56,915 bases of DNA from positions 1-56,915 of the forward strand of contig NW_021835176.1 of assembly GCF_006345805.1 (NCBI RefSeq), in the 5' to 3' direction. This document shows positions 244 to 19,053 of the stretch, one piece after another. Under the pieces are notes generated by a model. That model saw only the letters and a list, made by a program, of their open reading frames with translations. It ran no database searches and was not told where the DNA came from. This DNA comes from Octopus sinensis. Lineage: Eukaryota. Made by a program: the position numbers and the translations under genes. The first letter of the stretch is position 1. Each line of letters opens with the position of its first letter.

Positions 244-2056
244 CTAGTTTCAGCTTATGAGCTGTGGCATATTTGTAGCATATGGCTTGCATTACAGACA
301 TGAATTGTTGAAGTTTCACGTCGATGTCTGGCGAGGAGAGAGACATTTAGGCCAGTTTGTTTGAGGATCTCTTTCTCAATTTGTTTCCAGTTTGCCTTAT
401 GGTAGTTCAAGCTGGAAAGATTTTGAGGGTTTCTTGTAGGCTGCATGTCCGTGCTCTCTTTTGGCCCGTACATGGTCAGCTCTATCATGTTGTGATCCGA
501 GTGTAGTGTCGGTGTCACTTTCACATTATGGATGAGATCCATGTTATTTGTGAAGCAGAGATCCAGTGTGTTACCTGCCTGGTTGGTTGGAGTATTACCT
601 GCTCCATGTACAGGGTGTTGATGAGGTTCAGGAGGGACCTCGCCTGTCCTCGTTCACATCTTGTCATTCCTGGAGAGAAAGGCCCTCGGGCCATCTGACA
701 TTGGGCAGATTGAAGTCTCCCATAAGAAGCACCCTATGTGTTGTTCTAATGTGGTTAGAATTTCTTCTATTTTTTATAGGCAGTCTTCAAACTTGCCCAC
801 ATGGCTTGGGGCATCTGGAGGGCGATATGTAGCACACACAACTACATCAAGTTGCCTAATATGTACAATTAGTGTGTCACACACCGAGTTTGAGTATGAC
901 AAGAGGACCTGGGGGGTGTGAGGTCCTCACGGATGTACATAGCAACACCTCCATGACTCATTTCTTTCCTGTCGGTCCGTAGTACAGCATACTGTGGTAT
1001 GTGTAACTCCGCATCTGCTATGTCCGGTTTCAGGTGCGTTTCTGTAAGTGCTATGCATAAGGCTTGATTGCATGCAACAAAGTCTCTCAGGAATGGGATC
1101 TTTGTCCTGTTACTGAGTGTTTGCAGTCCTCTGATGTTCAGTAGGAGTATCGAGGTGAGGGTGTACGTTGTTGCCGGCGGTGTCCTCTGTCTGTTCTGCT
1201 GTTGCTGTGGTGGTCTGGTATATAGTGGGTAGTCCCACCTGCGGGCTTGGGTTTGATGAAGCCAGGTCAGCTGCTGTACAATCTTTTGTGCCATGCACAA
1301 AAAAGATTGTTGCTCAGCAGCTGCTCTTTCGACAACATCATGTTGGCTGTTTGTGGCGCGCACAACATCTGCGTACCTCCGCTTTGGGCAGGTGGTGCGT
1401 GGTCCATCCCTTTTCTTTGTGTTGATGGTTTGTCCATCTGCTCGTGTCTCTGTGGCAGGGTCCCCGATGTGCAAAGCGGCAGCCTGCACCTTCCTTTCCA
1501 TGCCAGCAGGAACCTCTCAGGTAGAACATACACACCCGTGTGCGCTGTTTGGTTCCATCCTTTGCGGTTCCACTTCTATTCCTGGTTGTTTCACTCTTTG
1601 GTCCTGCTTGAGCTTTTTCTTTTCCTTTAGCTCTTCCAGTCCTTCTTTTAGTTCTTCTTCCTCTCTCTACTCTTCACCGGGTTCTCCGTCTCCATGGCCC
1701 TTGCTGCCGGTTGGAGAACTTGCACCTGGGTTCACTTCCCGGGCAGGTTTCTCATTCAAAACCTCCTCCCGGGCGTCACCAGGTGGGGGTGAGGTGATTC
1801 TTTCATCGTCTCCATTCTTGCCATCTTTGCCCCGCTCGTTCTCAAAGATGGCATCAAGTGCGCCAATGTGCGACCGTACAAGCGCATATGAGCGCACGAA
1901 TTCCCGTCTCTTTCGCTCCATCTGAGCGCTGTCCTCTTGTAGCCTCTGCTCTTCAGCGCAGCCGCAATCACCTCGCTCGCTAGGGCTATCTCCGCCGGTG
2001 CACTCCCATGCTTGTACGAATAAATCCAGCTCGTCAGGTCTCCATGCTCTGGACAT
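244..2056 (-). mobile_element. LINE copy A (CR1/L2-related, possibly Proto2-like): ORF1 plus APE endonuclease; RT missing because the element breaks off in the microsatellite
   Basis: APE motifs across frames: LLLNIRGL, ALTETHL, LRTDR..GGVAMY (869-1501), TYRPP and LMGDFNLP (~700-840), LHSDHNMI (255-542). ORF1 ATG at 2056; CCCH finger CMFYLRGSCWHGKEGAGCRFAH at ~1465-1535. Clade assignment not tested. Confidence 0.85.
1667..2056 (-). pseudogene. LINE A ORF1 N-terminus with a Myb/SANT-like domain interrupted by two compensating frameshifts
   Basis: The frames join as MSRAWRPDELDLFVQAWECTGGDSPS / EVIAAALKSRGYKRTA / QMERKRREFVRSY. Confidence 0.7.
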
Positions 2057-2109
2057 GCTGGATAATCCGTCTATCCGTTTATCTATCTAATTATGTTCGA
2101 GAGAAGACA

Positions 2110-3460
2110 GGAAATATTAAGGCTAATTAGAAGATAGAGTACTTGAAAAGAAATATTAACAATATTAAAGTTTGTGTAAAAACGTTATTTGGGTAAAAAC
2201 GTTATTTAATCTTAGGCTAATTAGGGGATAGAGTATCTGAAAATGTATTAGCAATATTAATATTATATTAGAGTGTGGATAAAAACGTTGTTTAATCTTA
2301 AGGCTAATTAGGAGATAGAGTATCTGAAAATATATTAGCAATATTATATTATATTATAGTGTGGGTAAAAAAACGTTATTTAATCTTAAGGCTAATTTGG
2401 AGATAGAGTATCTGAAAATATATTAGCAATATTAATATTATATTAGAGTGTGGGTATATAAACGTTATTTAATTTAATCTTAAGGCTAATTAGAAGACAG
2501 AGTATCTGAAAAATTATATATACAATATTAAGCATATTACCGTTATTTAATTTAATCTTAAGGCTTATTAGACGTTATAAATTTAAACGCTATTTAATTT
2601 AATCTTAAGGCTAATTAGAAGATAGAGTATCTGAAAATATATTAGCAATATTAATATTATATTAGAGTGTGGGTTAAAAAAACGTTATTTAATCTTAAGG
2701 CTAATAGGAGATAGAATATCTGAAAATATATTAGCATGTAAATATTATATTAGAGTGTGGGTAATATTAAACGTTATTTAATTTAATCTTAAGGCTAATT
2801 AGAAGATAGAGTATCTGAAGAATTATTAACAATATTAAAACATATTAAACGTTATTTAATTTAATCTTAAGGCTAATTAACAATAATTATTAACAATATT
2901 AAACAATATTAAACGTTATTTAATTTAATCCTAAGGCTAATTAACATAATTATTAACAATATTAAACAATATTAAACGTTATTTATTTAATCCTAAGGCT
3001 AATTAGACGTTATTAATATTAAACGTTATTTATTTAATCTTAAGGCTAATTAGAAGATAGAGTATCTGAAAAATTATTAACAATATTAAAACAATATTAA
3101 ACGTTATTTAATTTAATCTTAAGGCTAATTAACAATAATTATTAACAATATTAAACAATATTAAACGTTATTTAATTTAATCCTAAGGCTAATTAACAAT
3201 AATATTTAACATATTAAACAATATTAAACGTATTTAATTTAATCTTAAGGCTAATTAACAATAATTATTAACAATATTAAAACAATAATAAACGTTATTT
3301 AATTTAATCCTAAGGCTAATTAACAATAATTATTAACAATATTAAACAATATTAAACGTTATTTAATTTAATCCTAAGGCTAATTTGACGGTATCAATAT
3401 TAAACGTTATTTAATTTAATCTTAAGGCTAATTAGAAGATAGAGTGTCTGGAAAATTATA
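2110..3460. repeat. AT-rich minisatellite array, about 19 units of ~47-93 bp, anchored on AACGTTATTTAAT..C(T/C)TAAGGCTAATT
   Basis: About 19 AAGGCTAATT-like anchors counted by eye between ~2120 and ~3425; long, medium and short unit variants. Confidence 0.9.
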
Positions 3461-3907
3461 TATCGAGAACAGATATTGAAAATGTAAACAAACAAAATGA
3501 CGATCGCAACTTTACTAAGATGTGGGCCTAAGTGAAGGATAAAATAGAATAATAAATAAAATATGAAATAGATGAAATTGATACTTAATCCAACAATGTG
3601 GTCTGGATTATTTTTTTTGGTGTTACGGGATTTTTTTCAGGAGAGATGCTTCTTTTTTCTTTCTTGCAGGATATAACTTGATTCAGTTATTTTTGCACCA
3701 TGTGCGTTTCGGCGAAAATGAAAATTACTGTGTATATGTATATATTTTATATATATATTTTTAAAAATATTTTAACCAAAGTGTTGTAGTGATCTCTATG
3801 ACTTAGAGTTTTACGTTTTGCAACTACAGTGGGTTATTTCGCCGATCTATGCAAACTTTTTCACAGAGAAGAGGCAATACGTCTCTCTCTGTTAAAAACG
3901 GAACCGG

Positions 3908-4039
<132 letters not shown>

Positions 4040-4764
4040 CAAGGAAAAATTGTAAAAATGCAGAATGCTAAATTGAAAGAAAATTTTAATGGAATGAGAA
4101 ATTGATAAAATATATAAATATATATTTATTCAAACCGGTTTTCGTAATAATATGACTTATCAAGAATAGTTAGGTAAAAAAAAATTTTTTAAGTGAGAAA
4201 GGGGAAAAAAGGAAGTTGCATTGTTTTTTGCAAAAGAATAATAATAAATATGTACAAAAATTAAAAAATAAGTACTCCGATACATTGTGAATTCGTTGTG
4301 TATCTTGAGTTTAATGATTGTTCACGAAAAAATTACCTTGAGGTATTAGGATCCAATGGGATTAAGACCATGTGTTGTTTGGTTTAATTAAGGATGTTGG
4401 CAAAACAGGAAGTAGTAGTAATTGTGGTTCTTCAGTTCCTGTGTTGTGAATAAGGGGAGACAACTCTTTTGAGTTCTTCAATTTGTGTTTCTCAAAACTC
4501 CCCTGCAATAAAGGCTGCTAATAAACCCCAAATTATAAAATTATCATTTTAGCTTCATTTGCATTATCTTTTTTATATAATTGTTAGTTAACTTAACTTT
4601 CAGATTTTAACACTTTATTTATATTATTTTCTAATTATATAAATTTGCATAGACCAATTTAGAATTACATTTCAGATTGTTATATCATATATAATAAAAA
4701 TGATAGTAATAACAACAATAGTAAAAATGATATTTAAAGAATATAAGTTTTAGCTTGAAGTGAT

Positions 4765-6150
4765 GAATGCATGGTATCCTTATATATTTGTGTTAGTCCA
4801 TCCATGAAGAATGAGGTAGAAAAAGGAGAATGCATGGTATCCTTATATATTTGTGTTAGTCCATCCATGAAGATTGAGGTAGAAAAAGGAAGTTTGATCA
4901 ACGAGGAGTTTGCATATAAAGTTGTGTTTGGAATTTTTGAATAAAGAGATTCTCCTTGTTAATTCTCTCCTGTGTGGTGATCCCGTCTTTACATTGGTAG
5001 AAGGGGAATATATAGAATTTGGGGTTTAAGTCTTTAGCGCATGAGTCTATGTGGTCACTCAGTGGAATTTGTCGGTATTCCGGGAGATTTATTTGTTCTT
5101 TATGCACCGCTACTCGTTTACGTAACGGGAGATTCGTTTGTCCAACATAATTATGTTGGCAACCAGCGCATGTGAGAACGTAGATAAGGTTCTCGGAGGA
5201 ACAGGAGAAGTTAGTCTTGATTTTAAACTTCGTACCTTGTTTGAAGGTAAATTCAGAGCCTTCAAGTAGGAAGGGGCAGGTGCCACAGTTTGGACGTGCA
5301 CATTTTTTTACTGCTGGGGTGGATGTGGTGTGTGAAGTTTGGTATTTGTCAAGAGTTTTTTTAAAGATTTGTGTTGCCTTTTACATTTGAGGATTTTGTG
5401 TGTATTTATAATATTTTTCATTTTTGGGTCTGTTGACAGTAGACTGAGGTTTTGTATGAGTGTGGTGTATGCTTCGATATTTTTGGGGTTTTGGGTGGAA
5501 ATGTATGGAAGTATTTTGAGGTTGTGTGTGGTGTTAGGTTGGGTGGTTTTCAGTGTAATGTTATCTAGTTCTTTGGCGCGTTTTATTCCATACTCTATAA
5601 GGGTGGAGGGATATTGGCGTTGTAATAGTGTTTTTTTGAGGTCTTGAAGGCGTATTTCTCGTGTTTTTGGATCCGAGACAATGGTGCATACCCTTTTAGC
5701 TAAATTGAAAGGGATATTTGTCTTGGTGTGTTTTGGGTGGCATGAACTAAAGAGGAGGTATTGTTGTGAGTCTGTAGGTTTGTGGTAGATGTCTGTTATG
5801 ATTTGGTTCTTAGTGTGTTTTATAATTAGGAGATCAAGGAATGGGAGATGATGTTTGCTTAATTCCATAGTGAATTGGATGTTGGGATGTATGTTGTTTA
5901 GTATGGTTTTGAATTCCAGGAGTTTTTCATAAGGTTCTTTCCATATGATGAAATAATCATCCAAATACCTTTTCCAGTTTTCCATTAGGTAGGTGTGGAA
6001 AACATGTCCAAATTTCTGGCGTGATATTTCATAGAGTGATAGTTCGAAGAAACCCATTATGAGGTTCGCAAGGACTGGTGCAGCCTTGGTGCCCATCGCA
6101 ATACCACATTTTTGACGGTAGTGTGTGTCGTCGAAGAGAAAAAAATATAT
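4765..6150 (-). mobile_element. Penelope-like element, 5'-truncated: RT C-half plus GIY-YIG endonuclease
   Basis: RT motifs GIAMGTKAAP, WKRYLDDYFIIW, LPFLDL, YHKPTDSQQYL..SSCHP (5308-6168). A frameshift leads into KKCARPNCGTCP..NFSCSSENLIYVLTCAGCQHNYVGQT..HKEQ..KENLFIQKF (4898-5310), which has the Cys cluster and GIY-YIG pattern typical of PLEs. Confidence 0.93.
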
Positions 6151-6524
6151 ATGAATGTTGGTATGCATATGTAAGCGTATATTTATTTACAAGATTTTGC
6201 AAAAAATACTTAATACAGTCGCATTACATGAAGAGTTTCTTAAAAATTATTGACTATAAATATTCTAGAAAAAACAGAATGACACGAACTTATGGAATGA
6301 AATTTTTGTATTGTGCTTTTAAGTGGTTTCGTTATCCCGTAATCTGTAGAGACGAGGTTGTTTCTGGTAGTAGCGCAGATTACTTCCTATTTAATTATTT
6401 CAGATTTAGAATTCTTATAAAGTATTCATACTATTTTTGCCGTTCATAATTGATCATTTTTATAATTAGAAATATTGAATTTCTAAATGTCTCAAAGAGA
6501 CACGAGCGGTGGTGGAGCGATAGA

Positions 6525-6730: not shown

Positions 6731-7691
6731 ATTTTTATAATGTATTTTGAAAAAAGGAAATATTTTGAATTTTTCATTTGCACAAATATCTAGATGTTCA
6801 TTACATGGAAATTTCTAAGAGCATTTCTAAAGAAGTTCCTAACAACATTTCTAGTCTGATTTGCTGTTTGTGCATTCTCACACGGTTAGTTAATTTCGAT
6901 CCTGTTTCTCCGATATAGTTCTCATTGCATGTGATGCAGAAGATGAGTCTTTTTCTTTTGCTTTGCAATTCATGTTTGCTTTAACATTCAATTCCTTCCA
7001 CATTTGAACCTTTTTTGTTTTTCCCTGCTCAATTATCTTATACTTCGTACAATTGGGTCTCCATTGTTTGTTAACTTTAATATTCCTTCTTCAGATGTGA
7101 ATTTCACTTTCTGAGATGTCTTTTGAGATTTGCTGGTTGTCCTCGGCAGCTGATTATTTGTGATTCCTTAACTGTGTATTGGGAATTCGATGACTGATTT
7201 AGAATTGGAAGAAATCGTTTGGCCGAATGTATGATATAGTATTTTCTAAGATTATGGGTGACTACAAGTGCAATATTTATAGTTGTGTTTTTGTTTTTAC
7301 CCTCAACGTGAGTGTTTCTCAGTAAAGCAGAAATTAATAGTTATAGGTCCGTCAGCAGTGACTACTCAGTCGCTCGCTGGTTTAGCTAAACCGGCCTGTC
7401 AGTATATATATATATTGTTGGCATCCTTTTTGTCTCGGGAGACAATGGAGTTGCGCACCATATAAATTTATTGCAGACTTAGCGAAATGCTCATGTCTTC
7501 ATTAAAAATTAATATAAACAGCTAGGCACAATATAAGACCATAAAGGAAAAAAATTATCGCCACTAACTGTAACTGAGGGTCCTGACACACCTATATTGT
7601 AAGAAATAGTTAAAAACTCTTAATGCTGTGCGAAGCCCACAATATACATACACGGACAGGGGACATTATATATACATACATACATAATAAA

Positions 7692-9840: not shown

Positions 9841-9918
9841 ATATATATATATATATATATATATAAATGTATATGCTATATATGATATTATAGATATATG
9901 TATATGCATATATATCTA

Positions 9919-9957
<39 letters not shown>

Positions 9958-9982
9958 GTATATGCATATATATATATATTAT

Positions 9983-10046
<64 letters not shown>

Positions 10047-10594
10047 ACATATACGTATATATGCGCACACACACATGTTTTATACAGAAACATGTTTGTA
10101 TACACATGTGAGTATATGTATGTATGTATTTATGTATGTATGTATGTATGTATGTATCTATCTATCTATCTCTCTCCGTGAACATGCAGGACGCACATGA
10201 GTAAGTATGTCCCTGTATGTGTGTGTTGGTGTGTGCGTGTGCTCGCACGCACGTGTGAGAGTGTGTGTGTTTGTGTCTGTCTCAGCATATTGAATACAGT
10301 TACCATCAGACAGATATACAGAACTTAGAAACCAACAAAAAATCCCCAAAAATCACCAAAAGGTAAGAAGGGAAAAATGAAGTAAAAAATTTATGCATTG
10401 CACACACACACATAAATATGTATGTGTGTATACACGCACACAGAGTCAAGCACACACATATTTATATATAGATGCATGTGTATGTTTGTCCGTGTATGTA
10501 GATGCATGTAATTAAATGTCTATATACCTATATATATATACGCGCGCACACACACTCATACACATACACACACATATATATATGCATACATGCA

Positions 10595-10630
<36 letters not shown>

Positions 10631-10857
10631 TATTATATATATATATATATATGTACGAGCATAATTGTCTACTGAAGTCTATGTACGGATTTCTGACCCT
10701 TCCATGCTAATGGACAAAAGCTTTTAGCATTAAACACGAATTATTGTTCGTTGCAGAATTGATGTCAATTTCAGTCTGTAAATGATGAAAAAAAAAAAAA
10801 AGAGTTTTAACCAAATATATATGTGTATATGTGTGTATACACACACACCCACACACA

Positions 10858-10919
<62 letters not shown>

Positions 10920-10983
10920 GCACACATAGATCTATACATATAAATGAAATAGACTAGCAATCTAATATATATATTATTATATA

Positions 10984-11031
<48 letters not shown>

Positions 11032-11348
11032 CTTTTATGTATATTAGATTGCCATAAATATCTATACATACATACACACGTATATATATGTATATATACA
11101 TACACAAACATACGCACACGCATAATACACACATATATGTATGTATATACACACACATACATAAATGCATATATATATATATGTATGACTATATGTATGT
11201 GTGGTGTGTGTGTATGTGTGTGTGTCTGTATGTGTGTTTGTGTGTTAAAATTAGTCTGAGAAGCCTGCATTCATATTTTTATCGTGAAGAATTAAGTACA
11301 AGTATTTCGGCATGACATACAGGGCACCGTTCATAAATACGTATTTAG

Positions 11349-11524: not shown

Positions 11525-12875
11525 TCTGACCAACCTCTGGAGAAATTCTTTAGGCTCAGGTTATATACCGAAACAACTCCTATCCCAGTCTGGCATTCCG
11601 GTTTTCATACAGGGAAACAGATCCATCGCAGTCAACTATCACCCAATCTCATTCACCTCCTACATCACTAAAGTGTTTGAAAGAGTGGTAAGATCAAGGA
11701 TAGCTGGCTTCCTGGAGATCCACAAACTCCTAAATGCAAATCAGTATAGCTTTCGCTGTGGCCTGGGACTGTTTAACACAGCTCATACACCATATTGAAG
11801 ATATACATAAAGCCTACGGAACAGGTTCGAACTCTGATGTCATATATCTTGACTTCAGTAAAGCGTTCGACAGGGTTGACCATAATATCTTACTCTCAAA
11901 ATTAGCAACTGTTGGAATCCATGGAATACTTCTACACTGGATTGATATCTCCTGGCGAATAGAACACAACATGTTGTGGTCGATGGAGTCCACTCAACCC
12001 CAGCAAAAGTCACCAATGGTGTCCCTCATGGGACTATCTTGGGCCCGCTCCTCTTTATAATCTACGCAAACGACCATTCCAACGTCGTAAATCACTGCAA
12101 AGTTAAAATATTTGCTGATGACTCTGAGTTCCAGCAAATCACCAATGAAGAAGACCGAACTCAACTCCAGTCTGATCTATATGCTGTAAGTTAATGGGCA
12201 GACAAAAACAAAAATGCAACTGAACGAGGGAAAATTTTAGCTGATGCATTTTGGAAGAAAGTCTATGCATTTTGGAAGAAAGTCTATGCTAAAACAGCCA
12301 TACTCTCTTCCTCCTGGGGAACTGCTCACAACATCTAATAATATGAGAGACCTAGGAGTAATTGTTGATAAAAATCTCAGTTGGAGTGCCCACATCAACA
12401 ATAAGGATCTTAAGAACCTTCCGGTCCAGAGAACAAGGTGTCATAATTCCACTTTTCTCCTTTGTATACTGCTGCCCCCTGTCGTCTCCCCATGCAAAAC
12501 ATCTCGAAAATTGAATCACTCCAGAGGGCACTCACTAAACGAACTAAGGGCATGATCTCGATTACTGGGACCTCCTTAAAGCCTTGAAACTCAACTCTTT
12601 CCAGCACCGCCGTGAGCGGTACATCATTTGCACGATGTGGAGAATATACCGCCAGCATTGCCCAAACGACCTGAACATTAGCTTCAAGGTTCATCCAAGG
12701 CTGGGACCACGGGTCATACGTCTCCTACCCAATTCAGGATCGCAACATATAGGTACACTGTGACGCAATTTCTTTTCCTCAACAAGCCTTGCCCTGTTTA
12801 ACATTGTCCCAAAACTGATCAAAGAGGAAAAGGATCCCATCACCTTTAAACGGAATCTGGACGAATTTCTTTTAC
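11525..12875 (+). mobile_element. 5'-truncated LINE RT fragment, same group as copy B
   Basis: [69 protein letters not shown] and LQHRRERY across several frameshifts; internal deletion near 12410. Confidence 0.92.
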
Positions 12876-13589: not shown

Positions 13590-13620
<31 letters not shown>

Positions 13621-13769
13621 GTTGTGGCTATTTGCAAAAGTGTCGTAAGTTAAAAACTTAATTTACTCCATATTTACTGAGTATTAATTGAAACAGGTGT
13701 AAGGGATGATGATTAATTTGGTGTTAATTAACAAACAATTATTAATTTCCCAGTCTCCATTTTCTTGCT

Positions 13770-13868
13770 TCTTCGTTCTTCTTCTTCTCTTCTTCTTCTT
13801 CTTCTTCTTCTTCTTCTTCTTCTCTTCTTCTTCTCTTTTCTTCTTCTTCTTCTCTTCTTCTTCTTCTT
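13770..13868. repeat. (CTT)n microsatellite at the broken 3' end of LINE B
   Basis: Direct reading. Confidence 0.9.
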
Positions 13869-13879
13869 TATATATATCT

Positions 13880-16750
13880 ATATGTTAAAGAGAGCGGGGC
13901 CAATGAGGTGATAATTGTGCCGTATTGTTGTTATGAGATGAGAGTGCGATTTTTGTTTTGGGCGGAGGCACGGGGCCCAAGCCTTGGATGTACCTTAAAG
14001 GTGATGCCAACATCATTTGGGCAATGCTGATGGAATATTTTTCCACATCATGCAGATGATGTAGCGCTCACGACGACGTTGGAGAGAATAGAGTTTTAGC
14101 TTTTCTAGTCGACCCCAATAGTCGAGGCCTGTCATGCCATCTATCTTTTTTGTGATTGCCCTTTGAGGTGCTTCAACTTTTATGATACCTTGTATTGTGT
14201 GGGGAGACCACAGTGGACAACAGTATTCAAGGTGGGGTCGGGCAAAAGTGGAGAAGAGAAGGATAATGGTGTGGATATCTCTCGACTGGAAAGTTCTGAG
14301 AATCCAGGAACACATTCTGCGGGCCATGTCAACTTTGGTGTTTATATGAGTGGCCCAGCTTATGTTGTTGTCCACAATTACTCCCAAGTCTCTGATGTTG
14401 TTGGACGCCGCGAGAGTTTCACCTGAAGGAAGGGAGTATGGGAGTTTCAGGGCATCCTCTTTTCCAAAGTGGATTAGCTCAAATTTATCCTCGTTCAGCA
14501 GCATATTGTTTTTTTCTGCCCATTGGATAACAGCCAATAGATCTGACTGAAGGCATGTCCGGTCACTCGCCTCATTTATGACCTTCTGTAGCTTGGAGTC
14601 ATCTGCAAAGATTTTTATGTTGCTGTGCTTGATGATGTCATTAATGTCATTAATGTAAATGATGAAAAGAAGTGGGCCCAGCACAGTGCCTTGCGGAATG
14701 CCACTACTGACTTTGGCTGGGCTTGATTTTACCCCTTCAACTACAACATGTTGAGATCTGTCTGTCAGGAAACACTTGATCCATTTCAGTAACTTTCCAG
14801 AGACACCAATGTTGGATAGTTTTTTCAATAGGATCTTGTGATCGACCCTGTCGAAGGCCTTACTGAAATCAAGGTAGATGACATCGGTGTTGGAGCCCTC
14901 TCCAAAGCTCTCAAAATGTCCTCAAAGTGATGCAGGAGCTGCGTTAGGCAGTCCTTCCATTACGGAACCCATGTTGGTTGGAGATCAGCCGTCTGTTGCT
15001 TTCCAGAAATTGGGTTATTCGAGATCTCACCACCCTCTCAAATACCTTGATGATATGAGAGGTGAGTGAGATCGGACGGTAATTCACTGCAAGGGACTTG
15101 TTTCCCTCTTTGAAAACTGGGACAACAGACTGGGACAGAAGGTGTTTTGGAATATAGCCAGCATCCAGTGAGTTTCTCCACAGATTAGCAAGGGGAGATG
15201 CAAGTTGGTGTCGACACACCTTCAGGACACAAGCAGGGAACCTATCGGGGCCTACTGCTGAATTGTGTTTTATTTCGTTTATCGCCGCTAACACATCAGG
15301 GGCACTAAACGTTATGTCCGATATAGTGTGTTGGGGGTTGACATCACTGATACAGCCCAGATCGGCCATATCAGGATTGCTGAAAACAGAGCAGTATTGT
15401 TTCTGCAGTATTTCGGCCATGGATTTGGCATTATCTTGGAGAGTGCCAGTTTCGTCAATTAGAGGGCCTACAGTGGAGACAGTGACCCTGCGTTTCCTCG
15501 CAAATGAAAAGAACACTTTGGGGTTGAGTTTGATTTTTTCAATGGCCCACTTCTCCTCAGCTGATCTTTGGTTATTGATGAGGGTCTTCATGCATTGTTG
15601 GAGGTTATATTTTTTGGATTCAAGCAGTGCGATAGCCGTCGAATGTGTGTGTTGCTGTTGGCAGTACTTTAGTTTGTAAATTTTTTGTTTGTTCTTTTTA
15701 TTTTTCTGATAATGGTTTTTCTGTTTTGGGGGATTCTGCACTTTTTGTTCACAGGTCTTGGTGGGGAGTGTTTTGCACATATATCTGTGACGGTGTCTAC
15801 AAAGATCTGCCAAGATGTTTTATGGTTGGTGGAGATGTATGTAAAGGACCAGTCAACATGTGATAGCTCGTTCCTGATTGCATCCCAGTTGGCATTATGG
15901 AGATCCATGTTGTCAAATGGGTGGGCTGGAGGAAGGTCACTAGGATTAGCTTTCGGCTGGTGGAATTTCATGTTACAGAGAACCATGTCATGGTCTGAAA
16001 GAAGGGTTTTTTCCACTGTAACGTTATGTATAGTGTTAGTGTGGTTACTAAACACTAGGTCCAAAATGTTCTGATGTCTTGTTGGTGCAAGGACAAGTGG
16101 GACAAGAAAAACTCATTCGTAAAGTCGAAAAGTGACTCTGCTGCTTCTTTGTCAGCGGTTGAGGCGGGAGTGCTTGGTTTCAAACAGTTTGTAGTCCAGT
16201 CAACACAGGGTAGATTGAAGTCTCCCATCATGAGTATGTTGCTAGAATGGCACTGTTGAATAAAGCACTTAATGCTGTTGAGGCATTCTTTAAAGCACAG
16301 TATGGGTGTTTGGGGCGGCCTATAGAGCCCAATTACTGTCAGGTCATTGGCTTTGTTGTGCACGGTGACTGATTCACAGTAGCCGTTAGAGAGATATACT
16401 ATTTCCATCTGCCGTAAATGAATCATGCAGGAAAATGGCAGTTCCACCCCTCCTCCTGCCGATACGATCCGCGCGGATGGTTGTGAAATTCTTCACTCTC
16501 ACTTCGGCTTCCAAGTGGGAGTTGTCAAGGTGGGTCTCAGTGAGAATGAAGAAAGGGATGTGGTGTGAATGGTTACCAACCCAGTCTTCAATGAATTGGA
16601 CCTTCCATTTTTGTGCATTGATGGAAGGGCTGACACCTTGTGCATTGAGTAGGAATGTGGAGGTTAGTGTAGTGGCTGGTTTTGACTGTTGCAGGGGGCT
16701 TGGATTTTTTGTGTGTGTTAGTGGCAGCAATGTGGGGAATTGGTGCACTG
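13880..16750 (-). pseudogene. LINE B ORF2 (APE endonuclease plus reverse transcriptase), frameshifted into at least 5 pieces
   Basis: ORF-track pieces 16386-16748, 16055-16447, 15669-16064, 14944-15813 and 14013-14828 are collinear with APE-RT domain order. Confidence 0.92.
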
Positions 16751-17947
16751 GGGTAATAGCATAGGATGGTGTTGAGTGATGGCTAGAATGTTTTGTGTAT
16801 CTCTTCTGCCATGTTCAACATGGCTAAAAAAGAATTTTCCTGCTTAGGGAGCAGTTTTTGGCTGGAGGTGTGGTTGCACTGTTGGATAGGGCTGTAGTTT
16901 CCACTTTTGTTGTTGTTGTTTTTGTGTCTTCCTGAAAAGACTGGACCAGCATTACTGCAGCATGGTGTGTTTCTATTTTTATTTTATTCAGGTTTGGTGT
17001 TGGCTTGAAGCCCCGTTTCTGTTTGGCGTCGGGTCCCTGGAAGATGAGTGAGGGACAGTCACTCAGCAGACATGTTCTCTCACGTTGGGAATACCGGCAG
17101 ATTTTGGGACTCCGAGTTGTGTGTGTTTTGAATTTCGATTTACTATTTGGTGGTGTTGATGTTATTGTGGGTGCGTGCTTTGGCCTGGCCGGTAGTGCGT
17201 CTAGTGCCGGGTAGATGCGTGAAGATGCAGTCACTATTTGTGCAGAGTCTCTGGCGCAGTGAATAGCGGCATATTTGGGGATTTCTTGTTTGTGCCGTGG
17301 GGGGCGCATTCTGCTTCCTATGTTTCTTTAAGTTTTTGTTACTGCGTAGTATTGAGGTGGTGATGTGGGGGAAGAGGGCAGTGGTTTCTTATTTGGTTTT
17401 CTGTTGGTATTTTTGGTGATAGAAGACGATGGTGGCAGCGGTGGTGATGATGATGATGATAATTGTGGTGGTTGCCGTGAGAGCGGTGAAAAGATACTGG
17501 CATTTAGTGAATCATCTAGTAAGCTAGAGTTGAGGAGTGGCTGTTGTTGTTCTTGTTGCTGTGGCTGTTGTTGTTGTTGTTGTGCTTGACCGATGTTAGG
17601 GTCAGCCATTGTGCTGGGAACCAGGAGTGGCTCATTCTGTTGTTGTTGTTGTTGTTGTTGTTGTGGCTGCTGATTTTCTAGCTGTTGCTGTTCTTGAACT
17701 GTGAAAATATGAAGAAGCTTTTCATAATGGCCTTTTGTCAGTTTGAAAGATACTTCGATATGTTTCAGTTTGCTACGAATCTGTTTGACGGATCGTGTGT
17801 TGACCACTTGTGATGTTTTTTCGGCAATCTCATTCAAACACAAACATTTAGATTTTCTGTTTGGGAAAGAGAGAGCCATGTGTTTATTAAAACATCAATT
17901 TCGTTATCAGACCAATTTCGTCTGTTGCAGGCCTGCAAGTTAGTCAT
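16720..17947 (-). pseudogene. LINE B ORF1: Myb/SANT-like domain, polyQ/Pro linker, two CCCH zinc fingers
   Basis: MTNLQACNRRNWSDNEIDVLINTWLSLSQTENLNVCV / NEIAEKTSQVVNTRSVKQIRSKLKHIE; ICRYSLRQRLCTNSDCIFTHLPGTRR (17197-17280); ICRYSQRERTCLLSDCP/THLPGTRR (17026-17108). Confidence 0.8.
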
Positions 17948-18269
17948 GTTTGTTTTTCTTTTGTTTGTTTTCCTTTTGATTTTTGAAAATATATATATTC
18001 TTTCTTGGGAGTTAAAGAAGTGTATATATATATAAATGTTCTCTCTTAGGGTGTGAGTTTTTGATTATTTGGTTGTTTGAGGATATTAAAAGAAAAACAG
18101 GTGTATATAACAATTTGTAGTTAAATGAAAACGTACTTACGGGTTTGTAGGTAAACACGTGGTTACAAATATATATATATTTAAGGTCAGTTAAGTTTTG
18201 AAGCTGTGTAGCTTGCTACTGACTTGGGAGAGAAACAAATAGACGTCCGTCCACTTCAACAGTTAATCC

Positions 18270-18322
18270 AACATATATATCTATATATATATATCTATAT
18301 ATATCTAATATATATATATCTA

Positions 18323-18376
<54 letters not shown>

Positions 18377-18438
18377 ATATATATATCTATATATTATATG
18401 TATGTATGTTATATATATATATGTATGTATGTTATATA

Positions 18439-18473
<35 letters not shown>

Positions 18474-18474
18474 G

Positions 18475-18509
<35 letters not shown>

Positions 18510-18546
18510 TTATGTATGTATGTATGTATGTATTTATGTATGTATG

Positions 18547-18592
<46 letters not shown>

Positions 18593-18625
18593 TGTATGTA
18601 TGTATGTATGTATGTATGTATGTAT
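18270..18625. repeat. Compound (AT)n/(TATG)n microsatellite
   Basis: Direct reading. Confidence 0.95.
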
Positions 18626-18755
18626 TATAAAAGTGTTTGCCTTTCTGTCAAGTTTAGAAAGACTTTAATATTAAGCAGAAGGATTAATGAATACTGCTTT
18701 GAAGATCCCATATTCAATATTACATTCGAAGTTTCGGTTTGCTCGCCTTCAACCC

Positions 18756-18801
18756 GACTGTCTGATGAAGGCAAGTAAGCCCAAACTTCGAAGTCACAGT
18801 T
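18756..18801 (+). ncRNA. Type I minimal hammerhead ribozyme-like motif (G12 mutated to C)
   Basis: GACTGT-CTGATGA-A-GGC(AAGTAA)GCC-CAAAC-TTCGAA-GTC-ACAGTT. Stem I is ACTGT/ACAGT, stem II is GGC/GCC, stem III is palindromic, and the cleavage triplet is GUC. Confidence 0.7.
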
Positions 18802-19053
18802 AGCATTTTAACTGTAAAAGTTGATATAAATATAGTTACTCGTGTGTCTAATGAACACACACATTTGTTATATTTATGATATCTAGCTATCTATATACAT
18901 ACATGACATGAATACTTACATGCATGCATACATACATACATACACGAATGCATACGTATATACAGACATGCATACATCCATATATATACATATATATAAA
19001 TATATAATATATATATATATATACAATACATATATATAATATATATATACATA

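What the first reader, a model, noticed from the sequence alone, without database searches (positions are those of the whole stretch)
16720..17947. LINE ORF1 combining a Myb/SANT-like DNA-binding domain with tandem CCCH RNA-binding fingers
Seen: reading from ATG 17947 (missed by the ORF track) gives RRNWSDNEIDVLINTW, and one inserted base (GTT TG AAT to GTT TGG AAT) restores V-W-NEIAEKTSQVVNTRSVKQIRSKLKHIE. Established: W-x3-E-x3-L-x3-W...W-x2-IA...R(S/T)-x2-Q-x3-K is the pattern of Myb/SANT-like trihelix domains (Myb_DNA-bind_4/5-type), and non-LTR ORF1 proteins are usually RNA chaperones (RRM, CCHC, PHD, esterase). Myb domains are known in R2-type ORFs, but I do not recall one in ORF1 of APE-type CR1-related LINEs. 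Inference: this ORF1p could bind DNA, either for target-site selection or to autoregulate its own promoter, in addition to binding RNA.
Basis: partly seen in the sequence, partly recalled or inferred. Interest (0 to 1): 0.85.

Follow-up and report, generated by a model that had tools for sequence, protein, structure and literature searches.

The report
Octopod LINE ORF1 with Myb-like domain
A decayed copy of a cephalopod LINE retrotransposon encodes a first protein that joins a Myb/SANT-like domain to two CCCH zinc fingers; in related LINEs that N-terminal position holds Tudor/PHD chromatin-reader domains, so this looks like a domain swap, which is interesting to transposon specialists but is a variation on a known theme.

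Summary
The sequence features are real. On the minus strand, an ATG at 17947 opens a degraded LINE ORF1 (17947-16783). It is followed by ORF2 with an AP-endonuclease and a reverse transcriptase.

An intact 407-aa ORF1 with the same layout exists in Argonauta hians. A third copy sits on a metagenome scaffold (L004).

The N-terminal ~65 aa match Pfam Myb_DNA-bind_4:
- Window: 30-31 bits without any invented residue (curated cut-off 27).
- L004: 27.2 bits.
- A. hians: 13.4 bits, below the cut-off.
- Eight shuffled controls: no Myb hit.

DNA alignment to L004 puts the 1-nt deletion at 17845/17844, and the disputed residue is an invariant Leu.

The two C-x8-C-x4-C-x3-H fingers and a C-terminal "FLxxL" helix are homologous to a widespread LINE ORF1 family from marine metagenomes. 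Some members of that family carry a Tudor domain and a PHD-like region at the N-terminus, and none carries a Myb-like domain.

The best reading is therefore a domain swap in an octopod LINE lineage. DNA binding, the three-helix fold and CR1 clade placement remain untested. I found no paper describing a Myb/SANT or CCCH ORF1.

Verdict: new variant of a known kind, moderate interest.

The parts
13880..17969 (-). Whole LINE copy: very short 5' leader, ORF1, ORF2. The 3' end is cut off inside the ORF2 C-terminal region at the ...GPALFN motif.
   Evidence: Nucleotide homology to L004 begins at window 17969 and runs through ORF2 at 71% identity. Three-frame translation shows the layout. The 3' end was read directly.
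16783..17947 (-). ORF1, dead copy. Frame path: frame 1 17947-17846; frame 3 17843-17331; frame 2 17328-17146; frame 3 17144-17049; frame 2 17052-16786. Stops at 17330-17328, 17145-17140, 16986-16984, and the terminal stop at 16785-16783.
   Evidence: Collinear with the intact 407-aa ORF1 of A. hians at L001:5944-7167.
17727..17923 (-). Myb/SANT-like (Pfam Myb_DNA-bind_4-type) N-terminal domain, residues about 9-74 of the repaired protein.
   Evidence: Pfam scores of 30.3 and 31.1 bits with X at the broken codon, against a cut-off of 27. Homologous domains score 27.2 bits in L004 and 13.4 bits in A. hians. The segment after the conserved R-S (putative helix 3 onward) has net charge +4 to +7.
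17844..17845 (-). Site of the 1-nt deletion that splits the Myb-like domain. The frame-1 TGA at 17836-17834 is a consequence of it.
   Evidence: DNA alignment A5 with L004 and A. hians. Segment coordinates.
17310..17690 (-). Low-complexity Gln/Ser/Pro-rich linker, including CAA/CAG repeats. It cannot be aligned between family members.
   Evidence: The A. hians linker is instead Thr/Pro/Asn-rich.
17215..17271 (-). CCCH finger 1, C-x8-C-x4-C-x3-H, with RNPQI lead-in and LPGTRR tail.
   Evidence: Regex hit in six-frame translations. Conserved in L004/P0121, in A. hians and in 22 of 23 members of the wider ORF1 family.
17044..17099 (-). CCCH finger 2. Three Cys lie in frame 3 and the His in frame 2, with the frameshift inside 17052-17049. 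It has the same lead-in (RSPKI) and tail (LPGTRR).
   Evidence: The intact counterpart is at A. hians L001:6937-6993.
16786..16836 (-). C-terminal NSFLAMLNMAEEIHKTF motif, the start of the conserved 'FLELxxLV' helix of the ORF1 family.
   Evidence: Alignments. In relatives AlphaFold2 models a ~30-residue helix at the corresponding position: block mean pLDDT 85-96 in P0136 (H118-148) and 82-92 in P0135 (H388-419).
16055..16748 (-). ORF2 AP-endonuclease domain, carrying one frameshift.
   Evidence: Exo_endo_phos_2 at 36.2 bits. Translation.
14013..15813 (-). ORF2 reverse transcriptase, carrying frameshifts near 14830-14945.
   Evidence: RVT_1 at 46.4 and 19.4 bits. 59% amino-acid identity to an A. 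hians RT protein.
13762..13868 (-). (GAA)n simple repeat abutting the truncated 3' end. Whether it belongs to the element is unclear.

Best explanation
The region is the first reading frame of a dead copy of an APE-type LINE retrotransposon from an octopod cephalopod lineage. It carries at least four frameshifts and three internal stop positions.

Its protein (ORF1p, about 390-410 aa when intact) has four parts:
1. An N-terminal Myb/SANT-like domain of the Myb_DNA-bind_4 type. Its core positions are W...L...L rather than W...W...W, and the segment aligned with helix 3 is basic.
2. A long low-complexity linker that is not conserved.
3. Two tandem C-x8-C-x4-C-x3-H zinc fingers, each with an R-[NS]-P-x-[IV] lead-in and a basic GT[RK]R tail.
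4. A C-terminal amphipathic helix.

Shown:
- Parts 3 and 4 are homologous to a widespread ORF1 family of related LINEs from marine metagenomes.
- In that family the N-terminal region carries a Tudor domain in some members and a PHD-like Cys/His region. No member carries a Myb-like domain.

Inferred:
- The octopod lineage replaced a chromatin-reader module with a Myb/SANT-like module.
- The CCCH fingers and their basic tails bind the element's RNA, taking the role that RRM or CCHC domains play in other ORF1 proteins.
- The C-terminal helix multimerises the protein.
- The N-terminal module tethers the RNP to DNA or chromatin.
For: Architecture:
- Window translations.
- An intact single 407-aa ORF with the same order of parts in A. 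hians (L001:5944-7167). An ORF2 frame that is open from before the ORF1 stop follows it.
- A third copy, L004, has an uninterrupted N-terminal domain that is 51% identical to the window.

Myb/SANT-like assignment:
- PF13837 is the top hit for all three copies: 30.3/31.1, 27.2 and 13.4 bits against a cut-off of 27.
- Eight shuffles gave no Myb hit.
- Domain pI is 8.2-10.4 and the segment after the conserved R-S has net charge +4 to +7.

CCCH and helix homology:
- An exhaustive profile search found 23 further proteins matching the finger at E<1e-3.
- 22 of 23 members of the wider family (22 of those proteins plus the L005 ORF1) carry C-x8-C-x4-C-x3-H-x2-GT.
- An HMM built only from non-cephalopod members scores the window's repaired C-part at 84 bits and the A. 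hians ORF1 at 31.7 bits (E 2.4e-8). The best of 2000 shuffles scored 10.4 bits.

These relatives are LINE ORF1s:
- L005 and L008 have the ORF directly upstream of APE+RT ORF2s.
- P0142 reads through into the endonuclease.
- The L008 ORF2 is collinear with the A. hians ORF2, at 35% identity over 942 aligned positions.

N-terminal modules in relatives:
- The AlphaFold2 model of P0135 residues 1-60 matches PHF20L1 Tudor1 (Foldseek E 1e-4, target-normalised TM 0.77, 36% identity).
- Weak Pfam hits to Tudor-knot, MBT and PHD.

Fingers and helix in relatives: block mean pLDDT 89-97 for the three fingers of P0136 and 82-96 for the C-terminal helix in the two models.
Against: - The intact A. hians domain is below the Pfam cut-off (13.4 bits).
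- Two of the three canonical Trp positions are Leu.
- Profile comparison with the only solved Myb_DNA-bind_4-type structure I could retrieve (GT-1, 2JMW) was not significant. It aligned only the last helix (probability 1%).
- PDB sequence searches found nothing.
- The three-helix fold could not be predicted here.
- The CCCH fingers do not reach any Pfam CCCH cut-off in the window or in A. hians. The finger model had no Foldseek match.
- Only three members of the Myb-type subfamily are known, and two of them are degraded.
- No binding activity of any kind is demonstrated.
- The direction of the swap is inferred from distribution, not from a rooted tree.
Confidence: 0.7

Rival explanations
1. 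The N-terminal domain is a real three-helix Myb/SANT-like module but does not read DNA sequence. Like SANT domains, or like the Tudor/PHD modules it replaces, it would bind histone tails or host proteins, or help bind RNA. It would then tether the RNP to chromatin or recruit cofactors without defining a target site.
For: It occupies the position that holds a Tudor methyl-lysine-reader fold and a PHD-like region in relatives. The canonical Trp triad is degenerate, W-L-L. No target-site pattern could be extracted from the few copies available.
Against: The domain is basic overall (pI 8.2-10.4), with a strongly basic segment aligned to helix 3. From general knowledge, that is more typical of DNA-binding Myb than of acidic histone-binding SANT domains. 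The best-matching family, PF13837, is named for DNA-binding trihelix factors such as GT-1.
Confidence: 0.3
2. The Myb/SANT resemblance is spurious. The N-terminus would be some other small helical domain, such as an oligomerisation or RNA-binding helix bundle, that shares hydrophobic spacing with PF13837 by chance.
For: Scores are only just above the cut-off in two copies (27.2 and 30-31 bits) and below it in the only intact copy (13.4 bits). hhalign against GT-1 was not significant. No fold prediction was possible.
Against: The same family is the top hit for all three divergent copies, with full-length coverage of the profile (positions 1-72 of 89) and E-values of 3e-7 and 5e-6 against 24,736 models. 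Shuffles give nothing. The invariant residues W12, E16, I17, L35, R49-S50, Q53-I54 and K57 (A. hians numbering) appear to fall on the W-x3-E...L-x2-I...RS-x2-Q-x2-K positions characteristic of the family, judged by eye against GT-1.
Confidence: 0.15
3. The Myb-like coding piece is not part of ORF1. It would be a fragment of another gene or transposon (for example a Harbinger Myb-like gene) that happens to lie upstream of a 5'-truncated LINE in this window.
For: In the window the two pieces are in different frames, and the window holds only one copy.
Against: In A. hians the Myb-like domain, linker, two fingers and helix form one uninterrupted 407-aa ORF. L004 shows the same order, and nucleotide homology to the window starts just upstream of the ATG.
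Confidence: 0.02

Closest known systems
PHD-type (type III) ORF1 of CR1/L2-group LINEs, as classified by Khazina & Weichenrieder 2009 and by Metcalfe & Casane 2014 (PMC4120745)
   Same: It is a two-ORF APE-type LINE. The ORF1 is modular, with an N-terminal chromatin-associated domain in relatives (a PHD-like region in P0125, P0128, P0134, P0135 and P0138). Reticulate exchange of ORF1 domains is the established theme for this group.
   Different: The ORF1 types listed in that paper are built from RRM, CCHC, coiled-coil/CTD, PHD and esterase domains. The terms Myb, SANT and CCCH do not occur in its text. Here the nucleic-acid-binding part is CCCH fingers, and the N-terminal module is Myb/SANT-like or Tudor.
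R2 non-LTR retrotransposon N-terminal zinc-finger + Myb DNA-binding region (PMC11204384)
   Same: A Myb-type domain encoded by a non-LTR retrotransposon, placed at the N-terminus next to zinc fingers. In R2 it recognises target DNA.
   Different: R2 has a single ORF, a restriction-like endonuclease, C2H2-type fingers and a classical Myb domain fused to the RT protein. Here the domain sits in a separate ORF1 protein of an APE-type element, is of the Myb_DNA-bind_4 type, and the fingers are CCCH. No site specificity is shown.
Myb-like (SANT/trihelix) protein of PIF/Harbinger DNA transposons and its domesticated MSANTD/NAIF1-type descendants (PMC9392472)
   Same: A transposon-encoded Myb/SANT-like domain of the same broad Pfam group, which acts as the DNA-binding partner of a transposition enzyme. 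It is a plausible donor pool for the domain (inference).
   Different: A different transposon class (DDE cut-and-paste). It is a stand-alone protein with no CCCH fingers. No direct sequence link to the octopod LINE domain was found or could be searched for here.
Plant trihelix factor GT-1 (PDB 2JMW/2EBI), archetype of Myb_DNA-bind_4
   Same: Same Pfam family hit. The register is shared: W-x3-E-x3-LI in helix 1, a hydrophobic residue followed by x2-I in helix 2, and RS-x2-Q/C-x2-K in helix 3.
   Different: GT-1 keeps all three Trp, whereas the LINE domain has W-L-L. Direct profile-to-sequence comparison was not significant.
L1 ORF1p (coiled coil + RRM + CTD)
   Same: The proposed working logic is the same: an RNA-binding module, a helix that could multimerise the protein and a disordered region, packaging the element's RNA.
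   Different: No sequence or domain homology. L1 ORF1p has no DNA- or chromatin-reader module.

Membership tests
APE-type non-LTR retrotransposon (LINE) | ORF2 with an N-terminal AP-endonuclease followed by a reverse transcriptase | tested here: met
   Exo_endo_phos_2 at 36.2 bits and RVT_1 at 46.4 bits, in the correct order on the minus strand. 4858 RT homologues at E<=1e-20.
APE-type non-LTR retrotransposon (LINE) | A separate ORF1 immediately upstream of, or overlapping, ORF2 | tested here: met
   In the window ORF1 ends at 16783 and the ORF2 frame is open from about 16815. The A. hians ORF1 stop at 7167 lies inside the open ORF2 frame. In L008 ORF1 is 100-1572 and ORF2 is 1563-4544.
CR1 clade (within the Jockey superfamily) | RT-domain phylogenetic placement with reference CR1 elements | not testable with these tools
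   No reference RT set (Repbase/RTclass1) was available. The database hits carry no family names.
CR1 clade (within the Jockey superfamily) | 3' end made of short tandem (often 8-nt) repeats rather than poly(A) | tested here: inconclusive
   The A. hians copy ends in (CTAAGTAT)x3 about 70 nt after the ORF2 stop, which resembles the CR1 octamer described in PMC2612034 (abstract seen). The window copy has lost its 3' end. One copy is not enough.
Myb_DNA-bind_4 (PF13837) Myb/SANT-like domain | Profile score at or above Pfam's gathering cut-off (27 bits) | tested here: inconclusive
   Met for the window with no invented residue (30.3 and 31.1 bits) and for L004 (27.2 bits). Not met for the only intact copy, A. 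hians (13.4 bits).
Myb_DNA-bind_4 (PF13837) Myb/SANT-like domain | Three regularly spaced Trp (or aromatic) core residues | tested here: not met
   Only the first is Trp (W12). The second and third positions are Leu in all three copies (compared with GT-1). Hydrophobic substitutions at these positions occur in other Myb/SANT domains (general knowledge).
Myb_DNA-bind_4 (PF13837) Myb/SANT-like domain | Three-helix bundle fold | not testable with these tools
Myb_DNA-bind_4 (PF13837) Myb/SANT-like domain | DNA binding | not testable with these tools
   Only indirect evidence: a basic domain with a basic segment aligned to helix 3.
CCCH (C3H1) zinc finger | Cys-Cys-Cys-His ligand pattern with canonical spacing | tested here: met
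   C-x8-C-x4-C-x3-H occurs twice in A. hians, once intact and once frameshifted in the window, and in 22 of 23 members of the wider ORF1 family. The ligand columns are invariant in the 22-sequence alignment.
CCCH (C3H1) zinc finger | Pfam CCCH profile score above the cut-off | tested here: not met
   Window: zf-CCCH_2 at 15.2 bits against 25.8. A. hians: 10.7 bits. Among relatives only a different finger of P0135 reaches zf-CCCH (20.6 against 20.5). zf-C3H1 hits score 14-17 bits against 20.9.
CCCH (C3H1) zinc finger | Compact zinc-knuckle fold / RNA binding | tested here: inconclusive
   The AlphaFold2 model of relative P0136 gives three compact fingers with block mean pLDDT 89-97, but Foldseek found no PDB match. 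RNA binding is untested.
Widespread marine-invertebrate LINE ORF1 family (Tudor and/or PHD-like region + 3 CCCH + C-terminal helix; defined here) | Terminal finger motif LC[RK][YF]S-x4-C-x4-C-x3-H-x2-GT[RK]R followed by an FL[ED]L helix | tested here: met
   A profile built from non-cephalopod members scores the window C-part at 84 bits and A. hians at 31.7 bits, with shuffles at 10.4 bits or less. Alignment.
Widespread marine-invertebrate LINE ORF1 family (Tudor and/or PHD-like region + 3 CCCH + C-terminal helix; defined here) | N-terminal Tudor and/or PHD-like region | tested here: not met
   The window, L004 and A. hians have the Myb/SANT-like domain instead. None of the 23 profile hits nor the L005 ORF1 shows the W-x3-E...LIN-x-W motif.

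The most novel reading that the evidence does not exclude
An octopod-specific LINE lineage exchanged the Tudor/PHD chromatin-reader head of its ORF1 protein for a sequence-reading Myb/SANT domain. In this reading the ORF1 protein, not the ORF2 endonuclease, steers the RNP to particular DNA sites or to its own promoter. That would be the first ORF1-directed DNA targeting described for an APE-type LINE, and a natural example of retargeting a LINE by swapping a domain.
Probability: 0.15. Interest if true: 0.7.

Novelty: new variant of a known kind. Interest (0 to 1): 0.45.

Why it matters
LINE ORF1 proteins are usually described as RNA chaperones built from RRM, CCHC, coiled-coil, PHD or esterase parts. 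Two additions follow from this work.

First, there is a broad ORF1 family, not described in any paper I could find, whose RNA-binding part appears to be CCCH fingers. Some of its members carry a Tudor domain and a PHD-like region at the N-terminus.

Second, an octopod branch of that family has a Myb/SANT-like domain in the N-terminal position instead.

If the N-terminal modules do tether the RNP to chromatin or DNA, the family would be a natural series for studying how ORF1 proteins influence where LINEs integrate. The apparently intact A. hians copy would be a testable element. Cephalopod genomes are very repeat-rich, so a lineage-specific and possibly active LINE also matters for annotating them.

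The result fits the established picture of modular ORF1 evolution, so it extends that picture rather than overturning anything.

Tried and rejected
- A word-indexed protein search with the repaired window ORF1 found nothing. An exact look-up of the window RT ORF also found nothing.
- Pattern scans of JGI metagenome, GTDB genome and IMG/VR contigs with the three-member ORF1 alignment found no confirmed relatives.
- PDB sequence searches with the N-terminal profile and with single sequences gave only chance-level hits.
- hhalign of the three-member alignment against GT-1 (2JMW) gave a probability of 1%, aligning only the last helix.
Both prediction jobs were therefore spent on relatives.
- Foldseek on the CCCH model returned no PDB match.
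- dN/dS between the window and L004 for the N-terminal domain could not be computed because synonymous sites are saturated (dN 0.34).
- L002, L003 and L006 (RT about 48-51% identical to the window) have no recognisable ORF1 of this type upstream. They were not informative.
- A weak tblastn hit of the N-terminal domain at window 2050-1829 (E 0.27) has no Pfam support. I rejected it as a second copy.
- The chimeric-juxtaposition idea was rejected because of the intact A. hians ORF.


Full report
**1. What is in the window**

On the minus strand, an ATG at 17947 reads MTNLQACNRRNWSDNEIDVLINTWLSLSQTENLNVCV and then hits a stop. A second frame continues with ...CLCLNEIAEKTSQVVNTRSVKQIRSKLKHIEVSFKLTKGHYEKLLHIF, followed by a Gln/Ser/Pro-rich low-complexity stretch.

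Further downstream, in alternating frames, come four pieces:
- RNPQICRYSLRQRLCTNSDCIFTHLPGTRR
- RSPKICRYSQRERTCLLSDCPS
- LTHLPGTRR
- NSFLAMLNMAEEIHKTF

The frame path is:
- frame 1, 17947-17846
- frame 3, 17843-17331
- frame 2, 17328-17146
- frame 3, 17144-17049
- frame 2, 17052-16786

There are internal stops at 17330-17328, 17145-17140 and 16986-16984, and the terminal stop is at 16785-16783.

Immediately downstream lie an AP-endonuclease (Exo_endo_phos_2, 36 bits) and a reverse transcriptase (RVT_1, 46 bits), both also frameshifted. The element ends prematurely at about 13880, inside the ORF2 C-terminal region, next to a (GAA)n repeat. The window holds only this one ORF1 copy.

**2. Relatives**

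A search with the repaired RT found 4858 homologues. The best was a protein of the octopod Argonauta hians, at 59% identity.

- **A. hians (L001).** The locus carries a single uninterrupted 407-aa ORF (L001:5944-7167) directly upstream of ORF2. It has the same order of parts:
  - N-terminus: ...RTWKDHEISTIINTWSELNEKGFTSLIHISNELFPLLKGRSRSQIQSKVRLIIQHFKL
  - a Thr/Pro/Asn-rich linker
  - two fingers: CMDAEYYGICTYKKCSRTH..GTKR and CRNAQRFKSCLQPNCDFTH..GTRR
  - a C-terminal ...SPFLDLLKITQKLHTSLKKLLE

  Its ORF2 frame is open from before the ORF1 stop through a 933-aa ATG-initiated stretch, so this copy looks intact.
- **L004.** A profile search with the two ORF1s found P0121 on ENA metagenome scaffold L004. 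L004 has an uninterrupted N-terminal domain that is 51% identical to the window's: HNWSDSEIDMLINAWFSLSQTEDVYTPCLNHVAKRTVQLFNNRSEKQIRDKLRHIESSFKL. Its ORF2 is 71% identical to the window at nucleotide level.
- **L007/P0139.** This is a further degenerate copy that contains only the finger region.

**3. The frameshift and the "repaired Trp"**

DNA alignment of the three N-terminal regions shows a single 1-nt gap in the window between 17845 and 17844 (AAATG-TTTG against L004 GTATACTCCATG). Repairing the sequence there gives ...TENLN[x]LCL-NEIAEK. This has exactly 14 residues between W24 and the N, as in L004 (...TEDVYTPCL-NHVAKR).

The Trp is an artefact of inserting a G next to TG. Compared with GT-1, the third canonical Trp position is also Leu (K-L in place of K-W).

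**4. Is the N-terminus Myb/SANT-like?**

Pfam Myb_DNA-bind_4 (PF13837) results were as follows.

| Sequence | Score (bits) | E-value |
|---|---|---|
| Window, alternative repair (...NVCLCLNEI...) | 29.9 | 7.8e-7 |
| Window, alignment-supported repair (X, Leu kept) | 31.1 | 3.2e-7 |
| L004 | 27.2 | 5.4e-6 |
| A. hians | 13.4 | 0.11 |

- The curated cut-off is 27 bits. In the window, profile positions 1-72 of 89 are covered.
- PF13837 is the top hit for all three copies.
- Eight shuffles gave no Myb hit and nothing above 16.4 bits.
- The domain is basic (pI 8.2-10.4). Helices 1-2 are acidic to neutral, and the segment after the conserved R-S carries net +4 to +7.

Against the assignment, PDB sequence searches and an hhalign comparison with GT-1 were not significant, and I could not obtain a fold prediction. 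My judgement is that the Myb/SANT-like assignment is probable, at about 80%, but not proven. It does not depend on the Trp.

**5. The fingers and the C-terminal helix belong to a larger ORF1 family**

An exhaustive profile search of 1.84 billion representative proteins, using P0121 plus exact window pieces, returned 23 further proteins at E<1e-3. All of them matched the finger.

Their sequences and alignment show a common plan:
- a variable N-terminal region;
- a finger ICxxYKxGxCPHG...C-x3-H;
- a finger C-x13-C-x5-C-x3-H;
- the terminal finger LC[RK][YF]SVxxRLCTNxxCxFxHLKGT[RK]R;
- a linker;
- an FLELKxLVxxM... helix;
- a Pro/Gln-rich tail.

An HMM built only from these non-cephalopod proteins scores the window's repaired C-part at 84 bits and the A. 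hians ORF1 at 31.7 bits (E 2.4e-8), while 2000 shuffles reached at most 10.4 bits.

These proteins are LINE ORF1s:
- L005 has a 445-aa example upstream of an APE+RT ORF2.
- L008 is a 4.7-kb element with ORF1 (P0135) overlapping a 993-aa APE+RT ORF2. That ORF2 is collinear with the A. hians ORF2, at 35% identity over 942 aligned positions.
- P0142 reads through into the endonuclease.
- One carrier scaffold is from a TARA Oceans sample.

AlphaFold2 models of P0136 and P0135 gave confident fingers and a ~30-residue C-terminal helix. Block mean pLDDT is 89-97 for the P0136 fingers and 82-96 for the helix in the two models. Pfam CCCH models match only marginally. Foldseek found nothing for the finger model.

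**6. What relatives carry at the N-terminus**

The first 60 residues of the P0135 model match the Tudor domain of PHF20L1 (6l0x), with Foldseek E 1e-4, target-normalised TM 0.77 and 36% identity. Pfam gives near-threshold Tudor-knot and MBT hits and a weak PHD hit. A C-x2-C...C-x2-C-x4-H-x-C...C-x2-C region is visible in P0125, P0128, P0134, P0135, P0138 and the L005 ORF1. None of these proteins has the Myb-like motif.

The family therefore keeps a constant body, made of the CCCH fingers and the helix, and varies its head. The octopod branch carries a Myb/SANT-like head and two copies of the terminal finger type.

**7. How it most likely works**

Shown:
- the domain order;
- its conservation as islands separated by a non-conserved low-complexity linker;
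- its homology to the wider ORF1 family.

Inferred from what is known of these domain classes:
- CCCH fingers are RNA binders in proteins such as TTP, MBNL, CPSF30, Nab2 and ZAP. Together with their basic GTRR tails, they would coat the LINE RNA.
- The amphipathic C-terminal helix would multimerise the protein, as the coiled coil does in L1 ORF1p.
- The head would contact chromatin or DNA. In relatives this would be through methyl-lysine/histone readers. In the octopod branch it would be through a Myb/SANT-like domain whose basic helix 3 favours DNA contact.

**8. Comparison with what is known**

Full-text searches found no paper that describes Myb/SANT or CCCH domains in a LINE ORF1. The terms Myb, SANT and CCCH are absent from:
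- the ORF1 classification paper PMC4120745, which lists RRM, CCHC, coiled-coil/CTD, PHD and esterase types;
- a 2026 survey of CR1-group elements, PMC13343379;
- a mollusc transposon survey, PMC10294476.

A gastropod non-LTR survey, PMC11203168, has no occurrence of Myb, CCCH or zinc; the one word-start match for "sant" was not among the passages shown.

Known parallels are the zinc-finger + Myb DNA-recognition region of R2, in a single-ORF element with a restriction-like endonuclease (PMC11204384), and the Myb-like protein of PIF/Harbinger DNA transposons and its MSANTD descendants (PMC9392472).

Repbase and Dfam annotations could not be consulted. CR1-clade membership is plausible but not established by phylogeny. 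Three things point that way: PHD-type relatives, an octamer tandem tail (CTAAGTAT)x3 on the A. hians copy (compare the CR1 octamer in the PMC2612034 abstract), and the SLQRRRERYI motif, which resembles the CR1/L2 C-terminal motif as I remember it.

**9. Verdict**

The element is a new variant within the known, modular world of LINE ORF1 proteins. It is a Myb/SANT-like-headed member of a CCCH-finger ORF1 family that I found described in no paper. Interest is moderate. It would rise if DNA binding and target steering were demonstrated.

Noticed in passing
L008:100-1572, L005:5238-6575 and proteins P0122-P0144: A widespread LINE ORF1 family from marine metagenome assemblies, including a TARA Oceans sample. 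Its plan is a Tudor domain in some members, a helical region, a PHD-like region, three CCCH fingers and a C-terminal helix. I found this ORF1 type in none of the ORF1 classification papers I could read.
   Followed up: partly
L001:5944-10217 (Argonauta hians BAAFZT010000031): An apparently intact full-length copy. ORF1 of 407 aa is open, and the ORF2 frame is open from before the ORF1 stop through to 10217. It is followed by about 70 nt of 3' UTR and a (CTAAGTAT)x3 tail, so it may be a recently active element.
   Followed up: partly
window 11532-12711 (+): A 5'-truncated, frameshifted RT fragment of a related but distinct LINE family (65% nucleotide identity to the main copy), lying head-to-head about 1 kb from the main copy's 3' end.
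   Followed up: no
window 5311-6168 (-): A 286-aa ORF with a weak RVT_1 match (19 bits), probably a remnant of another retroelement.
   Followed up: no
window 1829-2050 (-): A short ORF reading ...RAWRPDELDLFVQAWE..., with a W-x3-E-L-x-L-x4-W spacing reminiscent of helix 1 of a Myb/SANT-like domain (tblastn E 0.27). It has no Pfam hit and is probably chance.
   Followed up: partly
window 9900-11300, 13590-13620, 18224-19050: Long TA/TATG/TGTA-type microsatellite tracts, which read as YIYIYI... and CVCVCV... pseudo-ORFs, flank the LINE on both sides. A similar (TA/TAAA)n tract follows the A. hians copy (L001:10310-10800) and another lies upstream of it (L001:4660-5250). This may be genome background or an insertion preference.
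   Followed up: no
L004:1006-1038: A second, out-of-frame partial copy of the finger lead-in (RNPKICRYSLR) lies about 100 nt upstream of the intact finger. This suggests finger duplication or decay within the family. L004 lacks a recognisable second finger.
   Followed up: no
window 17537-17694: CAA/CAG (poly-Gln) repeats in the ORF1 linker. The A. hians linker is instead Thr/Pro/Asn-rich, so the linker composition turns over quickly between species.
   Followed up: no
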